Shown: positions 5,651 to 47,475, counted from the first letter of the stretch. The stretch is 64,000 nucleotides of DNA from Nageia nagi (GCA_050084985.1 JBITNC010000001.1:137268001-137332000), one strand, 5' to 3'. Numbers and translations: made by a program. Notes: a model not told the origin generated them from the letters alone.

Positions 5651-5673
5651 AGATCATAAAGAGTAATTATAGT

Positions 5674-5945
5674 GATAGTTAATTTAAACCCAACCAACAA
5701 AGGTGATCATAACAATATTGGAGGTTAGTTTAGATCCAACCAATAAATGTGACTCAAAATAATAATGGAGGTTAGTTTAGATCTAACTAATAAAGGTGAA
5801 TCAAAGCAATAGTGGAGGTTAGTTTAGACCCAACTAACAAACATGAGTCAAATCACTAGTGACAGTTAGTTTAAACCCAACCAATAAAGGTGACTCAAAG
5901 AAATAATGAAGGTTAGTTTAGATCCAACCAGAAAAGGTGACTTAT
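5674..5945. repeat. 47-bp tandem array, ~6 copies
   Basis: Unit GGAGGTTAGTTTAGATCCAACCAATAAAGGTGACTCAAA.. starts at 5674, 5720, 5767, 5814, 5861 and 5908. Confidence 0.85.
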
Positions 5946-7381
5946 ATGGTAATTAGCATAATGATTAGTTTATTCCTAATCAAAAATGTTGATATGTATT
6001 TTGGTACACCTAGGTTTATCTCTAAATGACCTGAAAGCATGAATACATTTATTTGTATGATGAGCCTAAGCTAATTAACTCAAATAAATATACATGAATA
6101 AGGGAATTAATAGTGTAGTAATAGAAAAATGAAATTACAATGATGTCAAGATGTAAAACACAAATACATACATGAAAGAAAAATGAATCAAGTGAAAGAT
6201 AAATTATATGTATCAAGATTGAGAATATGATGGATGAACTTGTTGGATACTAGTGACCTTTCTACATGAACCCTAAGGATAAATGCATAAGAAATACCAA
6301 TATGGATGCTAGTCTCAAATAACTTAGTGTAGACACTAACGATCCTGAAGAATGAGGTTTTCCAGTAATGATCAATGAAAACAAAGATGATGATAATTGA
6401 GCCAAGCATATGATCATAGAAGTGGATGAAAGATATTTGCTCAAGTGACAACAAGATTCCAATCTCAATAGCTAATGTTTAAAAACATCCAAGTTTAGGG
6501 TACCAACTATCGAAATGTAATCTTGACATATTTTCCCTAGGTTAGAGATACTTACATTATATCAAGTGTAATTCACCATTTTAACCCCTTGTATGAAGGT
6601 AGTAGTCATCCCGATATACCTAACATAAAACATAAGAACACAACCTGAGAAGTAAGTGATAATAAGGTAAAATATGATTAAATATGATTCAAACATATAT
6701 GTAAGTTGCACCTACGTGGAACCATATAAAGGGAAACACTTTTAGGTATTAACAAATAAAGTAACCAAAATATATTATTATAGTACCAATGTTAATGTGG
6801 TCATTAGAATGATGATTGGTTTAGTCCCAATCAATAAACTAAACAAAAAGAAATGGTTGATGTGGTTCCAAACAAGTGATTATAAAATAGGGATGGTTAT
6901 TTAATGTCCACCCAACAAGGACATGATTAACAAAGCAATATAAGAGAAAATAGTTTGCATGTATTAGTTATACATGTGAAAACATAAAGTAGTAAAGCAA
7001 GATGCTAATGATAATGATATCATATTTCTTAAATGATTTTGATAAAGAAAGCATTTTACTAATGAATCATATATGCATTTAGCAAGAATATGATCATAAA
7101 GAAGTAATTTCATTTTGTTTTCCAACTAGAAATGATGTCATATGTCAAATATGTGCAAAGATATACACTTCACTAAAAAATAAATTGATTTTATTTTCCA
7201 TTTAAACAAGCATGTATATGACCATGATCATAGCAATGTGCACAAATTGAAAATAGAAATCATAAAAGAGAAAGAGATACAAAAAAAATTTGATAAATAC
7301 CTGAGTGCATGTCCCCAGGTCTTGTATTATGAATCAAAGATGTATACTACCCCAACGTGAACACTACTACTACCACCAATG

Positions 7382-7879
7382 TGTAGAAATGTATAATGCA
7401 TTATTGTAAAGGTTTGTATTAATAATCTTTATAAATTCACTAATACTTAAGGGTGTAATTAGATACCTTAAGTATTTAAGTGAATATGATAATGTAACTT
7501 GTCCTACACTCCATGTCATGAGCATGCCCCTTGGATAAAATAGAGTGCATGTCATGCCTTTGTACATTGGGTAAAAGGGTGATCCAAAGAGGGATTTTGG
7601 CCTATAAATAGAAGGCTCCTTCTTTGTTATCAAAAACCAATTTGTGGAGTAAATTTATGCTAGAGGATAGTGTTTAAGACTTGAGGTTAGAAAGATTGTA
7701 AGAGTTCATATTTGAGATTAAGAGAGATCTAGTTAGTGGATGTACTTCTAGTTGGAGGAACCACTTACATCTTATGTTATCTTTATGAGATTGCTTTGTG
7801 AGTTTGTTAGATTTGAATTGCTATATTTCATGTGATCTTAGAATTTTATAGTTTTTTAGTTTATAGTTCAACTCTTTCA
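7382..7879 (+). repeat. Copia 5' LTR
   Basis: TGTAGAAATGTATAATGC...TTCAACTCTTTCA, contains TATAAATA; about 90% identical to 23518-24015 by eye (~46 substitutions). Confidence 0.93.
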
Positions 7880-10811
7880 TTTGGTATCAAAGCCTATTTG
7901 AAGGTTCTTCATCATTTTGGAGCTCTTCTTCCTTCAACTTGAAGGTATTCTTCCTTAAATTTTGAAGTCTTGTTGAGGTAAACTCAAGAGAAGGTATAAA
8001 TTCCTTTTCCATTAGTTATTTATTTGGATTATTTCATTGTGATACTAACATAGTTTGTGAGATATGTTAGTACATTTTTATTATTAAAATGATGCAATTT
8101 GCATTTTTTTACTAACCCTTTTAGTAGAAATTTTTTATATATTTCTTAGGATATTGATAAAAAAAATTAATAAAAAAGAGGGGTTAGTATACAAAAATTG
8201 CATTTTTTTTGAAATAATACTCTCATCTCTTTGATAATTTTTTCTTACTAAGCTCAAAATATAAAAGGGGGAGAATATTGAAGTTTAAAATGTTATAGGG
8301 TATTTTTTATTTAATATAATATATTTCAAAATGTGTTATATTAATTATAAAAGAAGGAGGAAATTTTTTAACAAAAAGATATTTGTATTTAAAAATAGAA
8401 GAGGGAAGTATGTATAAAAATCTCATCTTTCATTTCTTGTACAAGTTATCCAAATCTTTTTTCTCAATAGATTTGTACATATTTTTGTGAAGTATTTTAA
8501 AAATGTGAAGTATTTGTACTAACTCTACAAATTCTTGTTGAGTTTTTAAAAAAACTTATGTTCTTTTGAAAAGATTGGAAGGGGGGTCTGCTACAAGCAT
8601 GAACCCTTTCAAATGCTGAATGTGGCCCCCTCATAGGTCTGCTCAATTCCTTATTTATGTAGGGTTTTAGGAAAGGAGAGTAGACCCCTTCTTCCTACAT
8701 AGCCCAAGCTTTATTTGTTTACTTGCCCCTTCACTCCTTGTGTCTTCCCAACTGCTCCTTGGGTGCCTCTCTTGGACACTTCCGTCCACCCTACGATCAG
8801 CTCCTACTACTCCTCCATCTACTAACATGCCTCTATTTCTATTCTCTACACAACCCTTCAACAATGATTCACCCTTTCATCTCCATCTCCTTTTTTAATG
8901 TTTCTCTTCTATGCATAGCCCTTCATTAGGCATTATTTAATATTTCTCCATTGCCCTCATGGGCTATTGCAAAAGCCCTTATAGCCTAGTAAAATTAAAA
9001 CAAAAATCTACTTCATCTCTTCATTTGCTCATCGCCTCCTCATCTCACATAGCCCTTTCATTTGGCCCTAAACATGAAACTCTCCTCCTCGCTTGAACCT
9101 CTCCTCCTCGTGTGAACCTCTCTTGATTTTTTCTATTAAGCCTTAGTCTGGTTTCATCTACTCACCTCCCCTTGGATCTTCTCCTTGAAAGCCATTCATA
9201 TTTGTTTTAAATATGCTTGCTCCCTCATCAGTTCTCCTTGTAAAATCTCATTAATTTGTTGGTAGATTACTTTCAATTCTTACAAGTTATAGTTATTTTT
9301 TTATAGAAACCCATACATTATGGTTTTTCCATTAATTGATGTCCTTCATATTTATTTCACTTTGACTTGGAGTAGGGTTAAAATCAGAATGAATGATGAC
9401 TTTTCAATCTTTATCTTGTTTAATTGGAAAACATCGTGATAAAAGTACTAAAGGAATTTTTTTTACTTCTTACAATTATGGTAAATGTTACTTGGGTAAA
9501 AGTAATAAATAAAAAAAAAATTCCTTAGTTAAATTTCCTAAGGTTAAAATTGCAAAGTCAATGATTATTGAAGGGCTCTTTTTGTCAAACAAATAATGGG
9601 GAATTTTTTTTATAATTGTTGGTTACTTAAAAAAAGAGAGATTAGAATACATACCTATTAAAAATTAAAAATTTTTGAATGCATGACTAGATTTTTTTTA
9701 TCTCTATAAAGCATTCATTTGTTTATAATTAAGTATTTATCTTTTTTTAAGATAAATTTATACAAATTAAAAGGAAATGATGCATGCTTATTAATGATGC
9801 ATACTTAATTTTTTAAGTTATGGGATTGATGCATGCTAAGTACTTTCTTATGCAAAGTTAATGGACTTGTGCAAATTATGGCATTTCTATCCTTATGCAA
9901 AGTTAACTTAATTGATGATGCATGCTTATTTCTTTTAATTATGCATGCTTATGCTTAAGTATTTATCATTTTTTCTTGCAAAATTAACTTATGCAAATTA
10001 TGGACCTATGTAAAAATGTCCTTTAGGGGTTAGTAAACAAAATCCATTGGACTCTTAAGGTTCCAAGTTATGAATGGATGATGTTTAATTTATGCTCTTT
10101 ACTTCATGTTTAGCACTTTTGCCTAATTTACTTATACAAAAATTGTAAACATTGAAATGATCATCTCTCTAAAATGAACACTTTCACACATACATTCTAC
10201 AACATGACTTGTTTGGGAAGCCATGAGGTGAGGATAGGCGGATTGGAGCCTTTAATTTTGATGATCCAAATGGTGAAAAGTTTGTACTTCTCAATTACCC
10301 TTAAGTCCTCTGATGGTCTGGATATAACTCCAATAGGTGGACAAGCATGTGTGTAGTGATACCACATGTTTGCATGTTCATTCAAGAATTATCCTAATAA
10401 CTTAGAAGAAAAACTTGAAACCTAATCAAGATTAATAATTTGGTCGATCCAATAAATGTCATAACCTTAGAAAATAGTAGGTACTTCTCCTTGTGAAAAA
10501 GTATAATACTAACCAAGGTGAACTAGTTGAGGATTGGTAGTACTTGGGTTCCTCTTGTGTGGGCATCCAAGTGAAGGCCTAATTTTAGATAAAAAAAAAT
10601 AAGCCTCAATAATGTCACTCTAGATCTATAGTTCTTGAGATGAGAAATGTATTTGGGAACATGGGTTATTATTTGAGTTGTAAAACATTTGCATTTGTGA
10701 ATCAAATCAAGCATATCTCTAGTGTTAAATTTAGCATGTATTATTTACTTGGTTAAAACATAACATATAATATTATTTATTGAACCACATGCTTATTATT
10801 TTTTCATATCC

Positions 10812-13800
10812 TTGTGTAGCAAATGGGAGACTCCTTTTTACCCAAACACATTCTTGATGGTTCCAACTTTAAGGAAGCTTTGGAAAATAATTAATGAGAA
10901 CCTTGTACCTTCTATAAAAGAGAAGGCACTAGAAGCTTACTACACAAAGAATGAGTTGGCAACTTCCATGATCTTTCATGCAATTTCAAATGATGTGCTC
11001 TTGATGATTTTCTTTTCAACCTCAACAAAGGAAGCTTAGGATAAGCTTAAACAAATCTACCTTGGTTTAAAATTTTCAAGAAGGTTTACCATTCTCTAAA
11101 ATTTATTTCAATCTCATCAAAGGGAAGATGAAATGTGGCTATATAGTTGAATAAAATCATTGATCTAAGGACTTAACTTATTGCTTGTGAGTGCAATTGG
11201 ATCAATGATGAGTTCATGATCTTCATCATTCTTTAAAGACTTTTTTTAAAGTTTGGTAACTTTGTGATGGTTATGGAAACAAGGCTTGATGATAAAGAAG
11301 AAATCTTATCCCTTGAAAACCTTTTTAGACTCCTTTTAAAGAATGAAAAAACCTTTAACAAAAAGATGCTGATTTCTTCTCCTAAAGATAATCACGTTGC
11401 TATTGGAGCAACCAAAACTTCTTTCAATAATAATTTCAACCATCAAAAAAATTTTATCCTTCTTCCTCCAAAAGGTTTGAGATAAGAGGCAATGGTAACA
11501 ATGGTAGCAGGAATAATGGCAACAATGGCAACAACAAAAATAACAACAACAGCAATAGAAATAATGGCAACAACAACCACTTCAAGCAAAAATATGGAAA
11601 AGGTAAAGCAAATAATTCATATCCTAAGAAAAAAATTTGATGGTAATTGTAACTATTATGGCATCCAAGGTCACAAAGAAGTTGATTGCTAAAAAAAAAA
11701 AAAGAGAGAAAAAGAACAAAAGTAATGAAAATGTAAAGAATTTGAAAGGAAAGAAGAATATTAAAGCTATTTTTGCTATGATGCTTTACTCCATATCTCA
11801 CATATTTTTTTCTAATTGTATTATTGCTTCTAGTTGCACTAATCACCTATGCTTTGAAAAAGATAAGTTTGAGAACTCTCATAAGTATAGAAAAGATATG
11901 GTTACGATAGGTGATAACTCTACCCTTGAAATCCAAAGAATTCAGATTGTGTTGATTCATGAGAAGCTTATTAAAAATATGCTCTATGTTCCTAAGCCTA
12001 GGATGAACCTTCTTTCCATGATCCAAGTTGCTAGAAACGAATACTTTTTTGAGTTTGACTCTCAATCTTGGTGCATAAAGAAAGGAATTGCCATGTTGGC
12101 TAAAGGATTAGTGAAACATGATCTCTACATTATGAATCAAATTTTATCAAATATGTTTTTTGCTACAAGTGTGTGTTCTAGAGGCAATCTTTGGCACCAA
12201 TGTTTAAGGTACCTTAACCATAAGAGTATTCAATTCATGAAAGACCAAGAGCTTATGGAAGGTTTGCCTTCAATTTCTCCTTTGATTGGTCTATGTGAGA
12301 AATGCATCTCAATAATTGCATAAGCAAAAATTTGAAAAAGATAAGGCAACAAGAGCATCTCAACCTCTTCAATTTATGCATTTAGATTTGATGGATCCAT
12401 TTTAGATTAAGTCATTTGGAGGAGCATCTTATGTCTTGATCTTTATTGATGACTTTAGTAGAATGACCTTTGGGTATCTACTTGAGCACAAGGATCAAAC
12501 CTTTGAGAGTTTTAAATTTTTAAGGCCTTTGTTGAGAATCATACTAAATTTAAAATTATAATGTTGAGATCAAATAATGGGGGAGAATATAATAGCAATG
12601 AGTTTAATGACTATTATTCTAAGTATGGAATCAAAAGGTAGTTTATGATTCCTTACACTTTTCAGTAGAATGGTGTTATCAAAAGGAAAAATAGAATAAT
12701 TATGAAAATGGCTAGATGCATGTTGGGTAATCTTCTTAGTTTCTTATGAGGTGAAACTATGAGCATTTCTATTTACACTTTAAATAGATGTCTCATAAAA
12801 GCTATTCAGGGTAAAACTCCTTTTGAGACATGGTTAAAAAGAAAACCTAACATTTCTCATCTTAAGGTGTTTGGTTGTGAAGCATTCTCCTACATTATTT
12901 CTAAAAAAAGGAAAAAATTGGACAAAAATGTTGAAAAATGCATCTTTGTGGGTTATGATAGTTAGCATAGAGATTACAAGATTTACTCTCCTTCCTACAA
13001 AGCTGTGTTTGTTTCAAGGGATGTAAAGCTCAATGAAATTCTTGATGAATCTACTTCTAATGAAGATGTTGATAATCTAGAGTAATCTTTAGTTGCACCT
13101 TGCTGGTTCAATATTGATATAGATAAGTCACCTCAAGAATAAAATTCTCTAACATAAAGAGTAACAAGGAGCATGAACTTGAATAAATCTTTATTTACCA
13201 AGATTGACAACAAGCATGAGCCCTCAACCTTCAAATAAGCTTCTAAGCATGAGTGTTGGATGGAAGCCATGAAAGTGGAGTATGAGGTGCTTATGAAAAA
13301 TGAAACTTGAGATTTAATTCCTTATCCTAATAAAAAAAATATGATTAGTAATAAGTGAATCTACAAGATCAAGTTCAATTCAGTTGGAGATATTGAGAAA
13401 TACAAGGCAAAGTTAGTAGCCAAAGGTTTTGCTCAGAAATACAATCTAGATTATGAGAAAACCTTTGCTCCTATGGTAAATATGCCTACTGTAAGGATTA
13501 TCCTTGCTCTTTCTATAGCTCAAGGATGGAAAGTTTTTCAACTTGACATCAAGAGTGCATTTCTCAATGGTGACTTAGATGAGAAAATCTTCATGAATCA
13601 TCTAGAAGCATTTATTATGGAAGGTAAAGAGTCCTTTGTGTGCAAGCTAAATAAGTCATTGTATGGACTTAAGTAAGCACCTTGAGCCAAGTATAAAAAT
13701 ATTTCAAGGTACTTAGGAGACATTGGATTCTCTAAGTGTTTTTTAACTCTGATCAATATGTGCTCAATCAAGGAAAAGACATGGTCTTGATTCTCCTTTA

Positions 13801-14756
13801 TGTGGATGATCTTTTGATTATTTAAAATAATGATGAAATAATTTAAGAGTACATATCCAAATTTAAGGCAATGTTTGAAATGATTGATCTTGATCTCTTA
13901 CACTCCTACCTTGAAATACAAGTATACCAATATAAGGATTGTACTTATTTTAGTCAATCTAAATATACATCTTACAAAAGTTTGGAATGGAGGAGTTAGA
14001 TATGCTACGATCCATGTCTCTCTTGGAATCTCTATTTCTTTGAGCTCCAACTCTCAGTTGGTTGATGCTATAGCTTATAAGCAATTAATTAGTAGTCTTT
14101 TGTATTTAACTATTTTTAGGCCAAATATTATCTTTGCAATGAATCTGATGGCATGATTCATATAGAAACCACATGTTGAACATCTCAATGTTGTAAAGTA
14201 AATCTTGAGGTATGTTGTAAGAACTAAGAATCTTGCTTTCAAGTATTCTAAGTTACCCTCATTTATTCTCTTTGAATTCTTAGATTCTGACTATGGAGGA
14301 GATAGAGATGATAGGAAATCAACCTCTATGTATATTTTTAGCATTGGTTCAGGTGCTATCTCTTAGGCTTCCAAGAAGTAACCTACTATTTCTCTTTCCA
14401 CCATAGAAGTCAGATACCATGCCATGTTTGTTGTATCCCAAGAATTTATTTGGCTAAGGCATATTCTAAAAGAAATTGGGTATGAGCAAGTTAGCTCATC
14501 TTTGATTTCTTCGAACAATCACTTAGCTATTTCTTTAGCTAAAAATCTTGTGCTCCATCAAAGAATAAAACATGTGAAAATCCAAATCCATTTTATCAAG
14601 GAGAAGGTTCTTGATGGCATCATACACCTAGAGTATTATCCATCCACCTTGAACTCCACTAATTTATTCATCAAGCCCCTCCCAGAAGCTCATTTTTGTA
14701 AGCTTAGGGATGCTATCGAGTTGGTGAAGTTTCCCTCAATGGGAGGTGAAGTTTGA
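10812..14756 (+). pseudogene. Copia gag-pol (disrupted)
   Basis: Zinc knuckle GNCNYYGIQGHKEVDC; protease region (ASSCTNHLC..VPKPRMNLLS); GAG-pre-integrase LWHQCLRYLN; integrase KGKTPFE-like/LKVFGC..KCIFVGY; RT QLDIKSAFLNGDL..LNKSLYGLK, LLYVDDLL; RNase H AISLAKNLVLHQRIKHV. Many stops. Confidence 0.92.
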
Positions 14757-15251
14757 ATTCTTATGTTGAATTCATGTTTATGATGACAACTTCACCCTTA
14801 GGTGGATTTTGTGCTATATAGTGTTGATTTTGTTATACACCTTCGTGGTAAGTTTGCTCTATGTGAGGAACTTATTGTATAAATTTTTAAGGCATAAATA
14901 TTGGCTAATATAGCACTGTTCAATTATCCATGTATGAAGAACTCTTATGTGTCTTTTGGCACTATTCAGTTATCTATATATGAGAAAATCGTATGTTCAT
15001 GCTCTATTTTGTAATGATAATCAACACATGTTTTATATACAATAGGTGATTATGAATTTTGGCTTGACATCTTCATGATGATTTATAGTGCACCATTGAT
15101 CAATTCCTGATGGAATTTGTATGATTCATCTATCCTTGTTGATATGAATATGTTGCATCTAACTAATTACACCGAGAGGCGTTTCTACAGCTGCAGCATG
15201 GGGGTGGAGTGGGGGAGAAAAATGTCGCATGTGAGTCCGTCCGTTAAACAA

Positions 15252-15263
15252 TTGGCGGGAAAA
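15252..15263 (+). promoter_or_regulatory. E2F-type site (TTGGCGGGAAAA = TTTTCCCGCCAA) in the CpG-rich 5' end of the Helitron, TATA-like TTATATAG ~20 bp downstream
   Basis: Exact match to the plant E2F consensus TTTSSCGS; function not shown. Confidence 0.45.
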
Positions 15264-15568
15264 TAATTTTTTTAAAATTAAAATTATATAGCCGACTGAA
15301 ATATTAAAAGACACATCTTTTCAAAAATTAATATATAAATGGAACGAAGAATATCAAACATCATAAAAAATCATTCCCAAATCAATCGAGAGATGTAGTG
15401 AATTCGAACAAGCAAAGTTAGAACAAAAGATTGTAAAAACAGAAGAGAACTTTAATTTTATTGTAAGTTAATTCTCTACTATTGTAAATATATTTTTACT
15501 GTAATATTTCTTATTTCTTATTTTACATACAATTTATACTCTGAATTCTTTTGCACTTCTGTTTGTAT

Positions 15569-17051
15569 AAAACTTTATCAAAAAATATCTCTAATGGATA
15601 TTGTCAAAATGCCTCTCATGGATATTGTCAAAATCGCAGTCTTTTCTCCAGTAAAAGTTAGGGTGTCGTTTAGAAGTACAAATCCATCGCATCCCTGCAA
15701 GAGAAACTTACAGAGATCACGATTATCCAACATATAAAAATAAAATTCATAAAGATATCTCCACATTCAGACATATTTTTTTGTGATAATCTTTATTGAC
15801 ATTGTCATACATTAACAAAACAGTCATGAAAATGAAGGCGAAGACTATGGATAACGCATGTGGACATGTTTTTTCATAAAAAGATGCGCTAAGTTGCGCA
15901 TGAGAGGTAATATAGCCATAGCATACAATCAATACCAGTCTGCATATCAACTCAATATTTTTTATCTTCGCCATCCTTCAAGACTGTGGGGACCTGAGAT
16001 GCACAGGGGAGTGCTTTAATAAGGATGGCATTCGATGGAGAAAGAATTTACATTTCTCCAAACTACAGAAAAGGGAGAAAACTTTATCAAAAAATATCTC
16101 TCATGGATATTATCAAAATCGTATTCTTTTCTCCAGTAAAAGTTAGGGTGTCGTTTAGAAGTACAAATCCATCGCATCCCTGCAAGAGAAACTTACAGAG
16201 ATCACGATTATCCAACATATAAAAATAAAATTCATAAAGATATCTCCACATTCAGACATATTTTTCTGTGATAATCTTTATTGACATTCTCATACGTTAA
16301 AAAAATAGTCATGAAAATGAAGGCGAAGACTATGGATAACGCATGTGGACATGTTTTTTCATAAAAAGATGTGCTAAGTTGTGCATGAGAGGTAATATAG
16401 CCACAGCATACAATCAATACCAGTCTGCATATCAACTCAATATTTTTTATCTTCGCCATCCTTCAAGACTGTGGGGACCTGAGATGCACAGGGGAGTGCT
16501 TTAATAAGGATGGCATTCGATGGAGAAAGAATTTACGTTTCTCCAAACTACAGAAAAGGGAGAAAACTTTATCAAAAAATATCTCTCATGGATATTGTCA
16601 AAATCGCAGTCTTTTCTCCAGTAAAAGTTAGGGTGTTGTTTAGAAGTACAAATCCATCGCCTCCCTGCAAGAGAAACTTACAGAGATCACGATTATCCAA
16701 CATATAAAAATAAAATTCATAAAGATATCTCCACATTCAGACATATTTTTCTGTGATAATCTTTATTGACATTGTCATACATTAACAAAACAGTCATGAA
16801 AATGAAGGCGAAGACTATGGATAACGCATGTGGACATGTTTTTTCATAAAAAGATGCACTAAGTTGCGCATGAGAGGTAATATAGCCACAGCATATAATC
16901 AATACCAGTCTGCATATCAACTCAATATTTTTTATCTTCGCCATCCTTCAAGACTGTGGGGACCTGAGATGCACAGGGGAGTGCTTTAATAAGGATGGCA
17001 TTCGATGGAGAAAGAAGTTACGTTTCTCCAAACTACAGAAAAGGGAGAAAA
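15569..17051 (-). repeat. Three tandem 485-bp units of a captured class III peroxidase gene fragment (TATA-like box, 5' UTR, exon 1, intron 1, start of exon 2)
   Basis: Units start at 15569, 16078 and 16563 (the first has an extra ~24-bp duplication). Each encodes a signal peptide + HAQLS(A/T)SFYEKTCPHALSIV, then out of frame LRLHFHDCFVN (copy 2 diverged), a GT..CAG intron, then GCDGFVLLNDTLTFTGEKTA. Confidence 0.93.
15635..15974 (-). pseudogene. Class III peroxidase fragment, copy 1 (exon 1 15974-15811 with frameshifting deletion, intron 15810-15695, exon 2 from 15694)
   Basis: Distal-His motif RLHFHDCFV and GCDG motif flank a 116-bp GT-AG intron at the conserved first-intron position; the gene is truncated after GEKTA. 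Copies 2 and 3 start at 16459 and 16944. Confidence 0.9.
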
Positions 17052-17789
17052 GCCAATGCATTCAATGCTTTACAAACCAAAACACGCAAATATGTGGCAA
17101 ATTGAAGCTTTAAGTTGGCTCAATGGAAAAGTAAAAAATTATCATACAGTTGCTTCTATTTTAGATGTTGTTTTCATTACGAATTTGTTTGATCAATAAC
17201 TTGGGAATTCATTCTATATTATATAAAGTCCAATAATCTGACAGGCTTTTTTTGAACAATAACTCAAGAATTCATTCTATATTAGATAAAGTTCAATAAC
17301 CTTAATAGATTTTCAAGACAAACTTTTTAATAGTTGAAAAATCATTATCATCCATATTGCTTTTGTGTAAATGCACTCCTGGGTCCCAACAGTTTCAGAT
17401 ACCATTCCCACAAGGAAGTCGCGTATAGATATGAAGTGGCATTTAGGAATAAGATATGTAGATTTTGTGTTCTATTGGAGATACATTATGCACCTATTTG
17501 AAGACATTAACTTCAATTAGTAACCTTAGATTCTCTTTTGAGTGTAAGAATTTAAAACTCTTTTTCTTATTTATTTATAACATATCATTAATATATGAGG
17601 GGATAGTTTGGAATCTGGGCTTTTTTTTTAAACACTTCTATGTTTACTTTCTTGTTAACTTTCTTAACATGAGTTAATTATTTAAGTATATTAATGCTTG
17701 AAAATTATGTAAATATCTTTAAGTTGTTATTTAAATAAATATAATGATGTATTCTCTTATGTTATTATAACAGACGACGATGTGAAAGA

Positions 17790-20700
17790 ATGACTGAAAG
17801 TGACAAAGAGAGAGAAAGACAAAGACAAAGAGAAAATCGAGCAAAACGTAGGGCAGAAATGACAAATGAACAAAAACAACGACAAAGAGCAATCGATTCT
17901 GAATGAAAGAGACAAACTCATGCTAATATGTCCAATGAAGAAAATGAAGAACAAAGAGCAATACACACTCAACAAATGAGAGAAACACGTGCAAAAATAT
18001 CAGAAGATCAAAGAGAAGAAGCATGCCAAAGATATATGAAACAACAAACAACAAACCAAGAAAATCAAACACAATTTCAACTTGAGGAGATTAGGAGAAA
18101 ACATGCGAATGACCGCCAACTTCAGCGTGCTAGACGAGCTGAGGAAGATAGTCAAAGAGAGGAAAGAATAAATCGTAATAATGTTCATGATAATGTAAGT
18201 GTTTCCGATGCATCCTCTTTTTTGAAAGAAATGCTAAAAATATAATTGTGGTGAGACAAACACAATATGAAGCAACTGAAATGGGAGAGACACCTCCAAC
18301 ACATCGTTTAAGAGAAGGAAATGTAGAAGGTTTACAAATGAATGCAAATCAAACAAATCATAATAGAACATATGGACATACTAATACAAATATTCAAATA
18401 GATTTCAAAGAAATACAAACCTTATTTCGAAGTCAACTACAAAAACTTGCATCACCATCGATGTGTTACATTTGCCAAGAATCTTATCCTGGAATGAAGG
18501 TGTTATCTACTACTGAAGGTCCGGCATGTAATAGATGTAGACAAGAGAAAATTCTTCCTCATCGATTTTCTTCCTCAAATCACATGGATCCTGGATCACA
18601 ACCATCAGAATTATCAAACTTAACACAAATTGAAGAAATGTTGATAGCACGTGTCAATCCAATATTACAAGTAACACATGCTACTGGAGGCCAATATAAG
18701 TACAAAGGGCATACAATTAGCTTTCCACAAGAAGTGAAACAAATTGCAAAGGTACTACCTCATCCTATAAATGAATTACCAGTCATTATTGTTCGAAGAA
18801 GAGATCAACGTGGTACAAATTATAATTTCACAGTAAATAAAGAGAGGGTCTTTAAAGCTTTGAAGTATAAGATAGAAAATGATAAGTTTTATAAGGATGT
18901 GCAAATTAATGAAGATGTTCTAAGAGATCTCCCAGCTAATACAGATACAAACATATTTAACATTCTAAACTCTGTTCATATGGAGTTTAATTCTGATATG
19001 AATGAATATGTAGTAATGGGTCCAACAATTGAGATGGATGAAGGAAATGTCATTAATCACACAACATCTATGGCCTATAAACCACCCAATGCACCAAGGG
19101 AGATGGAATTAATTCGTGCATGGGTCAACAACCCTAATGTAGAACCAATAACACTCATTGATTGGCCTGGAATTGGAGCATCTCCTATAAATGAGTATAT
19201 TACAGAAGGGTTGCTTGATATGGCATTTCCAACATTATTCCCAAATGGAAACTGTGATTGGATAGAACCAAGAAATAGAAAAGTTTATCTTCATGAATTT
19301 GCAAAACATTTATTACGATATAGAGATCATCATTTTGGAAAGCATCCAAGATTTAGGTATTTCATAATGAACATGATAATGAGACACCGTGCTCAGAATT
19401 CTTCAGCAGTGTTTGTGAAGAAGAGTCTTCAAGATTTGCCAACTACAATCCATGAATTGCGAGAACACATGGATAATATTCCCCAATCAAATTTAGCAGA
19501 TTGTTTAATGCATTTTGGCTCTACATTAAGAGGCACAAGATCTTATTGGACGAAGAGTCGTGCTAAATTAAGTGATTTATTACATCAAATTGGATCTCCA
19601 ACCATTTTTTTCACTTTAAGTGCAGCTGATATGTATTGGCCTGACCTTCATGCGTTAATGCCAGGAACATCCCCATCTGATTCAAGAGAAGCACAAAAAT
19701 GGCGAAGACAAAATATTATTGATTACCCACATATTGTAGCTCATTACATGCATCTATGAAATACAATTTTTCATAAAGAGGTATTGCAAAAACGAATGAA
19801 AGTCAAAGAATATTGGTGTAGATATGAATGGCAACATAGGGGATCTCCACATGTGCATGGTTTTCTATGGATAGAGGGAGCTCCAAACATGGATAATTTA
19901 GATTGGACAAGTGAAGAACAAGTGAAAAAAGCACAAACATATTTTGATAATATTGTGCATGCATGGAATCCTCGAGGAGACCCACATCAACGAAATATAC
20001 AGGTATGCATAAAGTATCTATTTTTTTAATTTTATGTTTTAAATACATATATATAATTAATAACCATTGTATATATTTCATAGCTTCTTCAAAATATTAA
20101 TCAACACCCATGTTTGAGGAATACACGTCAACTTGATCAAGTAGACTTAGATCTTGATTATGAAGAGATTCTCAATTGTGTTGAGCGTCACACTGTATGT
20201 AGAGAAGGTGCATGCTTACGCAAGAAAAGAGGAAAGATGGTTTGTAGGTAAATACTTATGACTACTTATATATATTTATAATTTTAAATTCATCATCCTT
20301 TATGTTAAACTAATTTTTCTTTTTATAGGTATAATGCACCATGGCCTTTATCTTTAGATGGATCCAAATTATATGAAGATCTAGAAACCAAAGATAAAAA
20401 GTATGAACCAATAAGAAATGATGATCGAGTCAATACACATAATCGACATATATTACAATTATGGAGAGCAAATGTAGATTGGCAACCTGTTCTATCAAAG
20501 CATGCTGTTATCAATTATATTGCTAAATATGCTGCTAAGGCTGAGAAAAGTTCAGAAACCTATCAAGAAATGTTGATGCGAATTACAAATTTAGAAAATG
20601 ATGATGATTTAGCAACAAGAGCATATAGGCGTCTTCTAACGGAAACAATTATTGAGAGAGATATAGGAGCACAAGAAACATGTCATATGTTATTAGAGCT

Positions 20701-22881
20701 TCCATTGGTTGAATGTAGTAGAGTTTTTATTTCTCTAAATGTTGGACGAAAAGTTTTCAAGGAGGTGGAAAATATTGATGAAGAAGAAACAGAAAGAAAT
20801 GGTAAATATTTAATTGATGGATATATTCAACGACCATGTATGATGGAAACTATCTCACTTATTGATGTAGCTAGATCATGGACATATAATCCAAGACGAA
20901 GAAGTGAGTTGAAATGGAGCACTAGAAAAAATGCAGCTATTGTGAGGGCATGGCCACGTTTTACGACCATTCCTGAAAAAGAATCAGAAAAATTTATTGA
21001 ATTTTGTTGGTCAGAGTTGTTACTTTACAAGCCATTTAGAAGTATAGAAAGAGATATCGGGGTTGATGATAGCACAATCATAACAAATTGGGAGGCATTC
21101 AACTATAGGCCTTGGCATATTGAGAGAATGAATAATATCCAAAATACAGAACAAGAATATCACAATGATTCAGAAGATGATGATGAACGAACAGTTCATC
21201 AGAACACTATAGAGAATGAATGGGAAATTATAGCCCAATTACATCGTGGAAATCACTTTACAAGGACAGAAATAGATATGCTTGGTAGAAGGGATGTTGA
21301 TAGACAAGCACAATGGGATAATGAATATATATTAGAAGAATACACAAAAAAAGCAATAAATTGGATAACCAGAATGAAACAAAATGGTGCATTTATTGAT
21401 GATGATGCCCCTTTAAATTACCTATATGAGAGCCTTAGCATAAAACAAAAACAAGCATATGATATAATAATGACACATTATAATCAGGAACAACATATAG
21501 ACCCTTTATATATGATAATTCAAGGAACAGCAGGAACAGGAAAATCGTATCTAATTGGAGCACTTCGTCAAGCATTTCAAGACTTACCATCTATAAAACA
21601 TTCTCCCCTTCTTTTACTTGCACCTACTGGAGTTGTTGCATTCAACATTGGTGCCACTACAATCCATGGAGCACTTCGAATTCCTATCACAGACTTTGAT
21701 AAATTAGAGGGATCAAGATTAAATACTTTTCAAGAAGATATGAAACATGTAAAATATATATTGATTGATGAAATGAGCTTCATAGGGTAGAAAATGTTGG
21801 AACACATAGATTCTCGCCTTCGAGAAGGTTTTCCAGAAAAATCAAATATATGTTTTGGAGGTAGGTCAATGATTTTAGTAGGTGATTTAGGACAGTTACC
21901 ACCTGTTATGGATAGACCACCATATGCCACTAATAGACATGCAAGATTATTATGGCAAAAGTTCACAACTGTTATAACATTAGATAGAGTATTTCGACAA
22001 GAAGGAGAGAGTGAAGATCAAAAAAGGTTTCGTCAACTTTTAATTAATTTAAGAGATGCAAATCCAACTGAAGATGATTGGAAATTATTGATGACAAGAA
22101 CAAATTCAAATCTAGATTCGGCTATAAGGGATGATTTTGATCAGAATATTCATCTATTTGCAACTAATGAAAATGTGCATAATCATAACAGGTATGAATT
22201 TATTTTAAATAAATCCATTTTTTAGAATTTTGAATTACTTGCTAATTTTTGATATAATATTAATATATTGCTAACTAATGAAATATTTTTTATCATAATA
22301 GGTTACAACTACTCAAGTTAAATTTTCCAGTAGCACGTAGTATTGCAACAAAATTAGGGAGCACAAAACAAGGAGGGGGTGATAGTGAAGAGCTTGAAAT
22401 TGAGTTATTAATTGCAAATAATGCAAGAGTTATGCTAACATCTAACTTATGGATAGAAGCTGGACTTGTTAATGGTGCTTTGGGATATGTTAGAAAAATT
22501 GTATACAAACCAGGGAATTCTCCACCTGATCTACCAACATATGTTATGGTAGAATTTGATCATTTTACAGGATGTTCACTTGAAGGTAAAGCTGTTCCAA
22601 TTATACCTATAGAAAGAGGTCGAACACATCAACTTCCATTACGATTGGCTTGGGGCTTAACAATACATAAATCACAAGGTTTGACACTTAATAAAGCAAC
22701 AATAGATATTGGAGAAAGGGAAAGGCAAGGTTTAACATTTGTTGCTATATCTCGCATCAAAGCATTGGATGGACTTAGAATTTTAGCACCGTTTCCATAT
22801 GATCGTTATGCAAAATTGAAATCAGGAAAAGGAGTTGTGCAAAGGAAAGCTGAAGAAGAAAGACTCAAATCTTTGGAGTAA
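17790..22881 (+). pseudogene. Rep/Helicase (RepHel) transposase, ~1600 aa, intron-containing, few inactivating lesions
   Basis: 23-aa N-terminal repeats; CYIC..CNRC; LTQIEEMLIAR..YKGHTISFPQ (DUF6570-like); GSPTIFFTLSAAD; HUH motif RYEWQHRGSPHVHGFLW; Y2 motif YIAKYAAK; PIF1 motifs GTAGTGKS, LLAPTG, DEMS, GDLGQLPPV, TIHKSQG, VAISR. GT-AG introns 20003-20083, 20248-20328 and 22192-22301 splice in frame. Stops at 17904, 19757 and 21788; frame break near 18195-18250. Confidence 0.92.
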
Positions 22882-23062
22882 ACAAAAATCAATATTACTA
22901 TGATTAATTTTGATTTTTTTTAAATCTTACTCAATATTATTTGTCAATGACTCCTTATGTATGAGTCATATTCATTTGTTAAACATTATTTTTAAAATAA
23001 TATTTGCATTTGTATTGTATCTCTTAATATTATAATTCAATAATCACGTGATGATGGATGCC

Positions 23063-23220
23063 ACTAGCTTTGATATAACCCCTTATATATCAAAAAATGT
23101 CGAGAGATATCATTTCGAGGTGCCTATCTCATTTCTTGGTATTGCTATATCCAAGATAGGCACCTCTAAATGATATCTCTCGGCATTTTTTGATATATAA
23201 GGGGTTATATCAAAGCTAGT
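23063..23220. repeat. 158-bp fold-back (67-bp arms, 2 mismatches) forming the Helitron 3' end
   Basis: ACTAGCTTTGATATAACCCCTTATATATCAAAAAATG(T/C)CGAGAGATATCATTT(C/A)GAGGTGCCTATCT at 23063-23129 is the reverse complement of 23154-23220. Confidence 0.95.
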
Positions 23221-23517
23221 CTTATTATTTGAGCTACTTATGAATTACAAGTTCCTTTGAGATTGCAAGTTATTTACTTTGAGTATACAGGCTCTTTGAA
23301 ACTCTTCATGACTTCCAATTGGATAACTACTTCATGTACATTGAAATCGATTGTGGTTAATGATTGTATTTGGCAAAGTAGTGAGTCTCAAACTAGATCT
23401 TGCTTAATTCACAAAGATGTAAAAATTTCTCATCTTCATTTGTATCTATTTGGAGGAGAACTCTCTTTCTCTTCTTCTCTCTTATTCACTATATCCCAAT
23501 ATTGCATTAAGAAGGAG

Positions 23518-24015
23518 TGTTGAAATGTATAATGCTTTATTGTAAAGGTTTATATTAGTCCTCTTTGTAAATTCACTAATACTTAAAGGTATCACTATAT
23601 ACCTTAAGTATTTAAGTGAATATGATAATGTAACTTGTCTTACACTCTATGTCATGAGCATACCCCTTGGGTAAAAGGGAGTGCATGTCATGCCTTTGTA
23701 CATTGGGTAAAAAGGTGATGCAAAGAGGGATTTTGGCCTATAAATAGAAAGCTCCCTCTTTGTTATCACACACCAATTTGTGGAGTAAAGTTATGCTAGA
23801 ATATAGTGTTTAGGATTTTAGGTTAGAAAGATTGTAATAGTTCATATTTAAGATTAAGAGAGATCTAGTTAGTGGACGTACTCCTAGTTGGAGGAACCAC
23901 TTACATCTTGTGTTATGTTTGTTAGATTGCTTTGTGAGTTTGTTAGATGTGAATTGTGATCTTTCATGTGATCTTGGAAGTTTAGAGTTGTTTAGTTTAT
24001 AGTTCAACTCTTTCA
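23518..24015 (+). repeat. Copia 3' LTR
   Basis: TGTTGAAATGTATAATGC...TTCAACTCTTTCA, preceded by a purine tract. Confidence 0.93.
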
Positions 24016-30165: not shown

Positions 30166-31085
30166 ATTCCAAGAATTATTTGACAAGATGCATGATGCAA
30201 ACACAATTTCATGGTTTGCAATGATTGTATGATACACAAAATGGATTTTTTGAAAAAGACCCTAAGACATGTATACAAAATGTGGAAGAATAGATGATGC
30301 TTGGGAATTGTTTTACAAGATGCATGATACAAACATAGTTTCATGGTCTATGATTATAGGATACACACAAAATGGGTTTTCTAAAAAATGCCCTAATACA
30401 TGTATGCAAAATGATAAAGAATACACAAGGCTCAAAAATTATTTGACAAGATGCATGACATAAACACTGCAATGATTGCAAGTTACACATAAAATGGGTT
30501 TTTTAAAATAGGCCCTAAGAAATGTATGCAAAAAGGGGAAGAAAACATAAGCTCAGAAATTGTTTGACAAGATGCATGATGCAAACATAGTTTCATGGTT
30601 TGCAATAACTATAGGATACACACAAATTGGGCTTTTTGAAAAATACCCTAAGACATGTATGCAAAATGTGGAAGAATACACAAGGCCCGAGAATTATTTA
30701 ACAATATGCATGATGCAAACATAGTTTTATGGTCTGTAATGATTGTAGGATACACATAAAATGGATTTTCTAAAAAGTGCCCTGAGAGATGTATGCAAAA
30801 TGTGGAAGAATACACACTGCCTAAGAATTGTTTGACAAGATGCATGATGTAAACACAATTTCATGGTCTACAATGGTTGCAAGATACACATAAAATGGGT
30901 TTTCTAAAAAATTTCCTAAGAGATGTATGCAAAATGTGGAAGAATACGCAAGCAATGAAATTATTTAACAAGATCCATGATGTAAACATAGTAATATGGT
31001 TTGCAATCACTACAAGTTATGCACAAAATGGGTTTTCTGAAAAATACCCTAAAACATGTATGCAAAAGGTGGAAGAATACAAGAC
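30166..31085 (+). repeat. ~133-bp tandem array (~7 copies) derived from a PLS-class PPR coding fragment
   Basis: CCTAAGACATGTATGCAAAATGTGG-like starts at 30261, 30392, 30514, 30647, 30781, 30915 and 31048; consensus translation ~DMYAKCGRIHKARELFDKMHDANIVSWSAMI.GYTQNGF.EK.L, with frameshifts and stops. Confidence 0.88.
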
Positions 31086-31642
31086 ATCAACATGTGATGA
31101 AAAATGCAAAGGAATACCTACATGCACCAACACCTTTGCTCACGTCACCTCTCCTCTCCTCTTCTCTACATCTCGCTCGAAATTGTAAATGAAATACCTC
31201 ACCTCTACTTTCCTCTCCTCCTCTATCCCTCACCACACCAAACTCGAAAAAAGTTGAAATACTCGAATTTTCAAGTGCTCACCTTTACTCATGTGTGAAC
31301 TTTTTGTAATTTTATTGGTTGAGATGGAAGTGCGATTTAAAACTACCTCCTAATGTTTTGTGGGCGGGTTAAAATTGCCTCCTAATGTTTTATGGGCAGG
31401 TTAAAACTACCCCCTAAAAATCATCTACATAATCCATTTATTTCTTTCCATCCACACCTTTCCATTTATTTTTTATCTTTTTTGAGGGGCAATTTTAAAC
31501 CGTATATTATAGATTTTATGAGGACGGTTTAAAACCAACCCATAAAAAGTGCCACTAAACGTCATAAATGTAGGTGGTTTAAAATTGTCACTTCATAACC
31601 ACCTCAAATTGCTTGCCTCTAAAGCCTATTTTTGGTCTAGTG
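30166..31642. mobile_element. CACTA (En/Spm) element right arm, apparently carrying the PPR array; left end cut by an LTR
   Basis: Ends ...AAAGCCTATTTTTGGTCTAGTG (reverse complement CACTAGACCAAAAATAGGCTTT); subterminal repeats such as TTAAAACTACCTCCTAA and GGCGGGTTAAAATTGCCTCCTAA at 31335-31610. Confidence 0.65.
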
Positions 31643-47059: not shown

Positions 47060-47475
47060 CTAGCTTTGATATACCTTTTTATGTATAAAAGGTAAAGGTA
47101 AATTATATTAATGTCCATAGGAGATCAATTGATCTATGGGACGAATAGCTTGTAGATCTAGAGGATCAACAACTTGTAGTAGGTTATTATATAGCATAGG
47201 TCAACGCATGACCAACTCAACCAACAATGGAGACATTGATTATTTTTTAAATTATGTTTAAAAAAATGCAAGAGAATTTCGATTATTCTTTTTAAATTAT
47301 ATTTATATAATTTTTAAATTATATTTTTGAAATTGATTTTTTTTAAATAATAAAGTCGATTCATTTTTTTAAATATTGAATTCGATGTTTTATAGACACA
47401 CTCGCATGGGATATTTTGGCTCTCCACTCTACCCTGACTGAAGCTATAGAAACACCTCTTGATGTTAATAATCTT
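47060..47475 (-). mobile_element. Non-autonomous ~415-bp member of the same Helitron-like family
   Basis: Minus strand 47472-47385 (ACATCAAGAGGTGTTTCTATAGCTTCAG..GAGTGG..AAAATATCCCATGCGAGTGTGTCTATAAAACA) aligns with 15166-15250; minus strand ends hairpin-TATATCAAAGCTAG|T like 23219. The terminal TC is not clearly retained. Confidence 0.8.

What the first reader, a model, noticed from the sequence alone, without database searches (positions are those of the whole stretch)
15158..23219. Helentron/Helitron2-type RepHel with Helitron1-type ends in a land-plant genome: candidate undescribed rolling-circle family
Seen: Rep motif 2 is EWQHRGSPHVHG, with WRANVD..YIAKYAAK, a DUF6570-like region and a compact PIF1 helicase ending soon after motif VI. 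There is no endonuclease domain and no RPA gene. The ends are A|TC and CTAG|T. Established: canonical plant Helitrons have EFQKRGLPH; the RGS variant marks the Helentron/Helitron2 clade, mostly described in animals, fungi, algae and oomycetes with asymmetric subterminal IRs. A Helentron Rep with CTAG ends recalls oomycete proto-Helentrons. A possible decayed sub-TIR pair (ACCGAGAGGCGTT 15171-15183 vs 23172-23184, all mismatches transitions) hints at an intermediate architecture. Inference: a recently active intermediate lineage that captures host genes and mobilises short derivatives. I cannot confirm that it is undescribed.
Basis: partly seen in the sequence, partly recalled or inferred. Interest (0 to 1): 0.85.

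Follow-up and report, generated by a model that had tools for sequence, protein, structure and literature searches.

The report
Helentron-type plant Helitron, corrected ends
This is a dead copy of a rolling-circle transposon whose enzyme belongs to the Helentron/Helitron2 branch, sitting inside a plant retrotransposon; its true ends (TT...CTAG, inserted between A and T) match the rare "proto-Helentron" layout known so far only from the oomycete Phytophthora.

Summary
The protein observation holds. There is one RepHel gene (DUF6570 + Helitron_like_N + PIF1) with motif EWQHRGSPHVH and YIAKYAAK. It has no endonuclease and no RPA gene.

Contigs from other copies of the host copia retrotransposon bridge the empty site. 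TCTAACTAA is therefore copia flank. The insertion is 15167-23219 (8,053 bp): TT...CTAG, placed in A^T with no target duplication and a 1-nt ambiguity. The proposed sub-TIR is no better than chance.

The RepHel carries the two published HLE2 markers, DUF6570 and Ser in RG-S-PH. It falls in a well-supported Cryptomeria + Ginkgo clade, next to fungal Helitron2 (Fusarium). It has three GT..AG introns.

This copy has two in-frame stops. Intact 1,309-1,437 aa relatives are annotated in Cryptomeria japonica.

HLE2 in land plants was published in 2024 (HELIANO), so "undescribed clade in plants" fails. TT...CTAG/A^T ends on an endonuclease-less HLE2 RepHel are the proto-Helentron layout, reported only in Phytophthora. 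I found no description of that layout in plants. The end definition rests on one empty site plus one short derivative in the window.

The parts
15167..23219 (+). Whole Helitron-like element, 8,053 bp. It reads 5'-TT...CTAG-3' and is inserted in A^T of a copia 3' untranslated region without target duplication. The alternative parse is 15168-23220, because of one ambiguous T.
   Evidence: Empty-site contigs (loose ends behind 15167 and 15162 equal the sequence at 23221 onwards). End sequences.
15167..15260 (+). 5' terminal region (LTS). About 90 nt are homologous to the 5' end of the short derivative at 47375-47468 (minus strand). It has no hairpin.
   Evidence: Alignment. The fold has z-score 0.26.
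15569..17051 (-). Three tandem 485-bp units (96-98% alike), each holding a class III peroxidase gene fragment on the minus strand. This is captured host sequence.
   Evidence: (families D1, D12), ORFs, and a match to peanut peroxidase residues 45-77 with E 3e-4.
18248..20002 (+). RepHel exon 1: DUF6570, the N-terminal Rep domain and the HUH motif EWQHRGSPHVH. There is an in-frame TGA at 19757-19759 where relatives have Arg.
20003..20083 (+). Intron 1, 81 nt, GT..AG.
20084..20247 (+). RepHel exon 2.
20248..20328 (+). Intron 2, 81 nt, GT..AG.
20329..22191 (+). RepHel exon 3: the catalytic tyrosine motif YIAKYAAK, a linker, and PIF1 helicase motifs I-III. There is an in-frame TAG at 21788-21790, just after DEMSFIG.
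22192..22301 (+). Intron 3, 110 nt, GT..AG, with a change of reading frame.
22302..22881 (+). RepHel exon 4: helicase motifs IV-VI and the stop codon. No further domain follows.
23063..23220 (.). Terminal fold-back with two 67-nt arms, 97% complementary, 24 nt apart. The right arm is the element's 3' end. The left arm is its inverted copy and begins with CTAG.
   Evidence: I1. DNA fold of -71 kcal/mol, z-score -20.
47060..47468 (-). Short non-autonomous relative, 409 bp. It reads A|TTAACATC...CAAAGCTAG|T and shares about 90 nt at the 5' end and about 35-60 nt at the 3' end with the large element.
7381..24015 (+). Host copia LTR retrotransposon. The LTRs lie at 7381-7880 and 23517-24015 (about 90% alike). 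A tRNA-Met-type primer binding site follows the 5' LTR. The pol gene ends at 14756.
   Evidence: (D10).

Best explanation
The region 15167-23219 is a nonsense-mutated copy of an autonomous rolling-circle transposon of the HLE2 (Helentron/Helitron2) clade. It inserted into the 3' untranslated region of a copia LTR retrotransposon in a land-plant genome; its closest relatives are in gymnosperms.

It encodes one RepHel of about 1,450 aa across four exons: DUF6570, an HUH Rep domain with the two-tyrosine motif, and a PIF1-type helicase. There is no endonuclease, OTU or RPA.

Its ends are 5'-TT and CTAG-3', and it sits in an A^T site without target duplication. It has no significant terminal inverted repeats. 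Its 3' end lies in a hairpin, here enlarged to a fold-back with 67-nt arms. This is the proto-Helentron layout.

Inferred mechanism, from Helitron biochemistry rather than tested here: the Rep tyrosines nick the transposon strand at A|TT, and the helicase unwinds 5'->3'. The 3' hairpin plus CTAG marks where to stop, and the single-stranded circle is pasted into a new A^T site. Read-through or template switching explains the captured peroxidase fragment.

This copy can no longer make the enzyme. It could still be moved in trans, as could the 409-bp derivative.
For: Domains and motifs.

Boundaries:
- 59 empty-site contigs from two runs, in two sequence variants, join 15167 (or 15162) directly to 23221 onwards.
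- A contig of a third run (X6 record 30) matches the element only from 15166 inwards, and its other 86 nt are unlike the window (table 8).
- The 409-bp derivative has the same parse, A|TT...CTAG|T.

HLE2 membership:
- DUF6570 is reported as HLE2-specific.
- Ser in RG-S-PH is the Helentron-diagnostic residue. 115 of 122 motif matches among the 262 relatives collected by then carry it.
- In the tree the piece lies in a 19-row Cryptomeria + Ginkgo clade (SH-aLRT 99). That clade joins a 41-row group (SH-aLRT 97) containing Fusarium oxysporum, Mycena and Phenoliferia proteins.
- All 12 full-length relatives scanned have DUF6570 + Helitron_like_N + PIF1 and no endonuclease.

Gene structure: three GT..AG introns and two stop codons.

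Proto-Helentron definition (5' TT, 3' CTAG, A-T insertion, no TSD, Helentron-type RepHel without endonuclease).
Against: - Only one empty site and one degenerate derivative define the ends. The single ambiguous T also allows a T^C parse.
- No canonical HLE1 sequence could be placed in the tree, so HLE2 placement rests on published markers and on neighbours. The Fusarium neighbour's identity with a published FoHeli family is assumed from its species, not shown.
- HELIANO's authors re-examined proto-Helentron and found 12-nt TIRs in it, so 'no TIR' may not be a true class feature. A 7-nt inverted match lies exactly where a Helitron2 asymmetric TIR would sit: 5 nt from the 5' end, and 36 nt from the 3' end just ahead of a small hairpin.
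- The giant fold-back could be a secondary rearrangement.
- The mechanism is inferred; nothing here tests activity.
Confidence: 0.75

Rival explanations
1. It is an ordinary Helitron2-type element whose asymmetric terminal inverted repeats have decayed in this copy. On this reading the CTAG end and the A^T site are incidental, not a family rule.
For: - A 9-bp hairpin follows it. This is the Helitron2/FoHeli layout.
- All its mismatches are transitions.
- The nearest non-plant relatives by protein are fungal Helitron2-type.
- HELIANO found TIRs even in proto-Helentron.
Against: - The exact core is 7 nt, which 10-26% of shuffles reach.
- The 409-bp derivative has no matching pair.
- The empty site holds a single T, so insertion was not into TT.
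- Both elements end in CTAG followed by T and are preceded by A.
Confidence: 0.18
2. The region is a composite. The autonomous element ends before 23063, and the 158-bp fold-back is a separate small palindromic element, or a rearranged neighbour, lying next to it. On this reading CTAG is not the autonomous element's own end.
For: - The left arm begins with CTAG and is preceded by A, as a reversed 3' end in an A^T site would be.
- Helitrons often insert next to one another (discussion text).
Against: - The whole stretch 15167-23219 is missing as one block from other copia copies.
- The derivative at 47060-47468 pairs the same 5' region with the same CTAG 3' end in one short element.
- A first-stage note reports another RepHel copy in this genome with a long palindromic CTAG terminus (s1-844655, untested).
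Confidence: 0.05
3. It is a canonical plant Helitron1 with a divergent Rep motif.
For: It has a CTAG 3' end, a hairpin near that end, an A^T target and a plant host.
Against: - DUF6570 is present and the diagnostic residue is Ser, not Leu.
- The 5' end is TT, not TC.
- There is no RPA gene.
- None of the 122 Rep motif-2 matches among the 262 proteins collected from the two searches with this Rep piece (the 120 and 150 best listed hits) reads RG-L-PH. All named neighbours are gymnosperm, fungal or animal DUF6570 proteins.
Confidence: 0.02

Closest known systems
Proto-Helentron-Pi of Phytophthora infestans (Thomas et al. 2014, PMC4067079)
   Same: - 5' TT and 3' CTAG.
- Insertion between A and T without target duplication, confirmed by an empty site.
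- RepHel with the Helentron-type Rep signature and no C-terminal endonuclease.
- Carries a captured host gene fragment.
   Different: - The host is a land plant rather than an oomycete.
- It is about 8 kb rather than about 14 kb.
- It has no SET or other extra genes.
- The RepHel has three introns, whereas the Phytophthora one has none.
- The 3' end is a fold-back with 67-nt arms.
- Kinship of the two proteins was not tested, because no Phytophthora sequence was identified among the hits.
Helitron2 / FoHeli elements of Fusarium oxysporum (Chellapan et al. 2016, PMC5148889; Bao and Jurka 2013)
   Same: - The RepHel is DUF6570 + Rep + PIF1, with no endonuclease and no RPA.
- A Fusarium oxysporum protein is the second-best representative hit (E 8e-92). 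It falls in the group that joins the gymnosperm clade with SH-aLRT 97.
   Different: - FoHeli have 12-16 bp asymmetric terminal inverted repeats, other terminal sequences (TCAG...ATTTT or TGCCT...CTCCTGT) and other target sites.
- Here no significant TIR is seen, the ends are TT...CTAG and the target is A^T.
HLE2 of land plants found by HELIANO, for example HelenSM92 of Sphagnum magellanicum (Li et al. 2024, PMC11417382)
   Same: It is an HLE2-clade RepHel with DUF6570 in a land-plant genome.
   Different: - HelenSM92 has short TIRs, TT insertion sites and a GIY-YIG domain. This element has none of these.
- The species list of that survey was not readable here, so I cannot say whether gymnosperm copies of this family were already counted.
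Canonical plant Helitron1 (HLE1)
   Same: CTRR-type 3' end (CTAG), a hairpin near the 3' end, an A^T target, gene-fragment capture and short non-autonomous derivatives.
   Different: The 5' end is TT rather than TC. The Rep has Ser rather than Leu at the diagnostic site. DUF6570 is present and there is no RPA gene.

Membership tests
HLE2 (Helentron/Helitron2 clade) | DUF6570 domain upstream of Rep, reported as HLE2-specific by HELIANO. | tested here: met
   PF20209 matches with E 2e-28 and 99.8 bits against a cut-off of 24.3. The marker status comes from the paper.
HLE2 (Helentron/Helitron2 clade) | Ser between G and P in Rep motif 2, ExQxRG(S)PHxH (Thomas et al. 2014). | tested here: met
   The motif reads EWQHRGSPHVH. 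The rule is quoted. 115 of 122 motif matches among relatives have Ser.
HLE2 (Helentron/Helitron2 clade) | Rep groups phylogenetically with HLE2 references and apart from HLE1. | tested here: inconclusive
   It groups with Fusarium, Mycena and Phenoliferia DUF6570 proteins (SH-aLRT 97). No HLE1 or Repbase reference sequences were available, so the contrast was not made.
HLE2 (Helentron/Helitron2 clade) | Short terminal inverted repeats of 12-16 nt, with the right one ahead of a 3' stem-loop. | tested here: not met
   The best inverted match is 7 nt, reached by 208 of 2000 shuffles. There is none in the 409-bp derivative. The test used two copies only.
HLE2 (Helentron/Helitron2 clade) | Insertion between T and T. 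| tested here: not met
   The empty site reads ...CTAAT|CTTATT, with a single T. The possible parses are A^T or T^C.
Helentron proper | [quoted passage not shown] | tested here: not met
   The protein ends about 45 aa after helicase motif VI. No Exo_endo_phos hit was found.
Proto-Helentron | 5' TT and 3' CTAG termini. | tested here: met
   Under the A^T parse the element is 15167-23219, TT...CTAG. The derivative has the same termini.
Proto-Helentron | Insertion between A and T without target site duplication, shown by an empty site. | tested here: met
   Shown by the empty-site contigs. A 1-nt ambiguity remains. The A^T parse is the only one common to both elements in the window.
Proto-Helentron | Helentron-type RepHel that lacks the endonuclease. 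| tested here: met
Proto-Helentron | Common descent with the Phytophthora element. | not tested
   No Phytophthora protein was identified among the hits I could name.
Canonical Helitron1 (HLE1) | 5' TC terminus. | tested here: not met
   The TC at 15158-15159 is copia flank. The element starts with TT (or TA).
Canonical Helitron1 (HLE1) | 3' CTRR preceded by a hairpin, and an A^T target. | tested here: met
   The 3' end is CTAG. A 9-bp hairpin ends 5 nt from the end in the large element, and an 8-bp hairpin ends 12 nt from the end in the derivative.
Canonical Helitron1 (HLE1) | Leu in RG(L)PH and, in plants, an RPA-like gene. | tested here: not met
   The residue is Ser. No RPA domain was found in any ORF.

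The most novel reading that the evidence does not exclude
A lineage of HLE2 transposons shared by conifers and Ginkgo, with plant-type introns and therefore long resident in seed plants, uses Helitron1-like termini as its family rule: TT...CTAG, an A^T target, a 3' hairpin and no TIRs. The proto-Helentron layout would then not be an oomycete oddity. It would be an old and widespread state within HLE2. That bears on which end structure is ancestral for all Helitron-like elements. It would also mean that TIR-based HLE2 finders miss or mis-bound a whole plant family.
Probability: 0.4. Interest if true: 0.65.

Novelty: new member of a known kind. Interest (0 to 1): 0.5.

Why it matters
Helitron-like elements are split into HLE1 (TC...CTRR ends, A^T target) and HLE2 (TIRs, T^T target). 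The single reported bridge between them, proto-Helentron, was known only from Phytophthora and was not found in a 404-genome survey.

A seed-plant family that pairs an HLE2 enzyme with TT...CTAG/A^T ends would give a second, independent case. That would make two questions testable: which RepHel features read which DNA ends, and which end type is older.

There is also a practical point. Annotation tools look for TIRs in HLE2 and for TC in HLE1, so they would set wrong boundaries for such elements in the giant gymnosperm genomes.

Tried and rejected
Other genomic copies could therefore not be aligned.
- The single metagenome scan, with relative P0010, returned only two short loci of 2.7 and 1.7 kb. 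Neither holds element ends.
- PDB sequence searches with the Rep piece and with the Tyr-motif/helicase piece found no Helitron transposase, only bacterial and yeast Pif1-type helicases. No HLE1 reference was gained that way.
- Naming the host from an ABCB exon failed. The best hit was 70% identical, to an unnamed transcriptome protein. Run organisms are coded. The host is therefore called a land plant whose element has its closest relatives in Cryptomeria japonica (up to 80% aa identity).
- Pfam found nothing in the short ORFs of the tandem repeat. One of the two gave a peroxidase match against the PDB.
- No 5' hairpin was found.
- I considered and rejected a TIR in the derivative that I had first seen by eye. 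It included flank bases once the 5' end was corrected.
- The four exons were analysed piece by piece, by reference.
- The search with Ginkgo protein P0121 scored only the 8000 candidates that shared most words.
Full report
**What is there**

On the + strand between about 18.2 and 22.9 kb lies a single RepHel gene broken into ORF pieces. Pfam gives three domains:
- DUF6570, E 2e-28.
- Helitron_like_N, E 7e-21, continued in the next piece.
- PIF1, E 1e-10 and 4e-10.

- EWQHRGSPHVHG.
- WRANVDWQ...INYIAKYAAK.
- Helicase motifs through to ...TFVAISRIKAL, with the protein ending about 45 residues later.

Mapping of Cryptomeria and Ginkgo proteins onto the DNA, together with the splice signals, shows four exons. 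They are separated by three GT..AG introns of 81, 81 and 110 nt, at 20003-20083, 20248-20328 and 22192-22301. The exons sum to 4,362 nt from 18248, about 1,450 codons.

Two in-frame stops interrupt conserved sequence:
- TGA at 19757-19759, where relatives have Arg.
- TAG at 21788-21790, just after DEMSFIG.

There are no frameshifts. This copy is therefore a pseudogene, but a lightly damaged one. I analysed the exons one by one, by reference.

No endonuclease, OTU or RPA domain is present. Full-length relatives end where this protein ends.

**Surroundings**

The element is nested in a copia LTR retrotransposon:
- LTRs of about 500 bp lie at 7381-7880 and 23517-24015, about 90% alike.
- The 5' LTR is followed by TGGTATCAAAGC, which I recognise as a tRNA-Met-type primer binding site (my own knowledge).
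- The pol gene ends at 14756.

**The ends**

I laid Logan contigs of four public runs on 14300-15560. Then they leave it:
- Behind 15167 they continue CTTATTATTTGAGCT... (17 contigs in X1, 14 in X4).
- In a sequence variant, behind 15162 they continue TTGATCTTGTTATTTAAGCT... (16 and 12 contigs).

That continuation is the window sequence from 23221 onwards. The empty site is therefore ...GCATCTAACTAAT|CTTATTATTTGAGC....

The inserted block is 8,053 bp. One T is ambiguous, so the block is either of two parses:
- 15167-23219: TT...CTAG, in A^T.
- 15168-23220: TA...TAGT, in T^C.

There is no target duplication.

Two further observations favour the A^T parse:
- The 409-bp relative at 47060-47468 (minus strand) reads A|TTAACATCAAGAGG...CAAAGCTAG|T. 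It is homologous to the large element over about 90 nt at the 5' end and about 35-60 nt at the 3' end. A^T is the only parse that gives the same target for both elements.
- A contig of run X6 matches the element from 15166 inwards, and its other 86 nt are unlike the window (table 8).

**The sub-TIR**

That is equalled in 10% of shuffles against the last 100 nt, and in 26% against the last 300 nt. The derivative has no counterpart. I do not count it as a feature. I note, however, that after the 5' correction it sits where a Helitron2 asymmetric TIR would sit.

**The 3' end**

The 3' end is a fold-back with 67-nt arms, 97% complementary, folding at -71 kcal/mol with z-score -20. Its right arm is the true terminus.

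Taken alone, the last 60 nt form a 9-bp hairpin ending 5 nt from the end. The derivative has an 8-bp hairpin ending 12 nt from its end. There is no 5' hairpin.

**Which clade**

Two published markers place the RepHel in HLE2:
- DUF6570 was found specifically in the HLE2 clade and proposed as its marker.
- Ser between G and P in motif 2 distinguishes Helentron-type from Helitron-type Rep.

Among the 262 relatives collected by then, 115 of 122 motif matches have Ser.

The best named relatives of the first Rep piece are, in order:
- Cryptomeria japonica proteins, up to 80% identity.
- Ginkgo biloba.
- Animal and fungal DUF6570 proteins at 33-38%.

No angiosperm protein is among the 120 best.

An exhaustive HMMER search found 5,466 relatives. 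A maximum-likelihood tree of 90 of them, with the same topology in a 187-row FastTree run, shows:
- The window's piece lies with two Cryptomeria proteins (SH-aLRT 96).
- These lie inside a 19-row clade of Cryptomeria, Ginkgo and unnamed environmental sequences (SH-aLRT 99).
- That clade joins a 41-row group (SH-aLRT 97) holding proteins of Fusarium oxysporum, Mycena and Phenoliferia.
- The other side of the tree holds the named animal sequences and many unnamed ones.

The protein atlas also returns basidiomycete DUF6570 clusters first. Twelve full-length relatives all have DUF6570 + Helitron_like_N + PIF1 and no endonuclease.

One limit remains. I had no HLE1 reference sequence, so the tree cannot by itself show exclusion from HLE1.

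**Age and activity**

Three observations argue for long residence in seed plants rather than a recent transfer:
- The clade contains both conifer and Ginkgo sequences.
- It has several sub-lineages within Cryptomeria.
- It carries spliceosomal introns.

Intact RepHel proteins of 1,309, 1,356 and 1,437 aa with the same architecture are annotated in Cryptomeria japonica. One stands for 27 member sequences. The 1,309-aa protein aligns to the window's exons at 64-73% identity.

Contigs 97-99% identical to the element's 5' region occur in two runs with different organism labels, and contigs about 90% identical in two more. Air metagenomes also hold the locus. The family is thus repeated and fairly young, even though this copy is dead.

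**Cargo**

The region 15569-17051 holds three 485-bp tandem units. Their minus strand encodes peroxidase-like pieces. One piece matches peanut peroxidase residues 45-77 with E 3e-4.

**Comparison with what is known**

HLE2 in land plants is published. HELIANO reported HLE2 in 13 species of 6 land-plant classes, with a Sphagnum example that has TIRs and TT sites. The clade-level claim is therefore not new.

The layout found here combines four features:
- 5' TT and 3' CTAG.
- An A-T target.
- No target duplication.
- A Helentron-type RepHel without endonuclease.

This is the definition of proto-Helentron-Pi of Phytophthora infestans. HELIANO's authors did not find that layout in 404 other genomes, and they re-read it as having 12-nt TIRs and a 5' stem-loop.

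Only three papers in the library mention proto-Helentron, and none reports it in a plant. No paper pairs HLE2 with gymnosperms. A recent Platycladus genome paper uses HELIANO without describing such elements.

I therefore file this as a new member of a known kind, a proto-Helentron-like HLE2 in a seed plant. Its kinship to the oomycete element is untested.

**Mechanism (inferred)**

By analogy with studied Helitron transposases:
- The HUH/Tyr-Tyr Rep domain nicks at A|TT.
- The PIF1-type helicase peels off the strand 5'->3'.
- The 3' hairpin with CTAG ends the transfer.
- The single-stranded circle integrates at A^T.

None of this was tested here.

**Limits**

The family-level end rule therefore rests on one empty site and one derivative.
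- First-stage notes report two more DUF6570 RepHel copies with CTAG ends elsewhere in this genome, one of them with a long palindromic terminus. I could not read those stretches.

Noticed in passing
window 15569-17051 (minus strand): Three 485-bp tandem units (96-98% alike) lie inside the element. Each encodes a signal-peptide/QLS..FYEKTCP piece and a QGCDGFVLLNDTLTFTGEK piece of a class III peroxidase. The second piece matches peanut peroxidase with E 3e-4.
   Followed up: partly
window 7381-24015: The host copia LTR retrotransposon has LTRs about 90% alike and a tRNA-Met-type primer binding site. Its family is extremely abundant in all four runs laid, with tens of thousands of contigs.
   Followed up: partly
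window 23063-23220: The fold-back with 67-nt arms is an inverted duplication of the element's own last 67 nt. A first-stage note (s1-844655) reports a similarly long palindromic CTAG terminus on another copy, so this may be a family trait rather than an accident.
   Followed up: partly
window 35248-45694 (minus strand): An ABCB-type full ABC transporter gene lies here. The best named-length-limited protein hit to its last large exon is only 70% identical, so the host species is not represented by a close protein in the searched collection.
   Followed up: partly
window 53947-55869 and 61018-62937: A direct repeat of about 2 kb, 97-99% identical, recurs at a spacing of about 7,070 bp. It could be the LTR pair of a young retrotransposon or a segmental duplication.
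   Followed up: no
window 30166-31100 and 5660-5940: Two satellite-like tandem arrays, with periods of about 133 bp and 47 bp.
   Followed up: no
window 17928-18245: A 105-aa ORF rich in charged residues (E, R, Q) lies just upstream of RepHel exon 1, in another frame. It has no Pfam hit and might be an upstream exon of the transposase.
   Followed up: no
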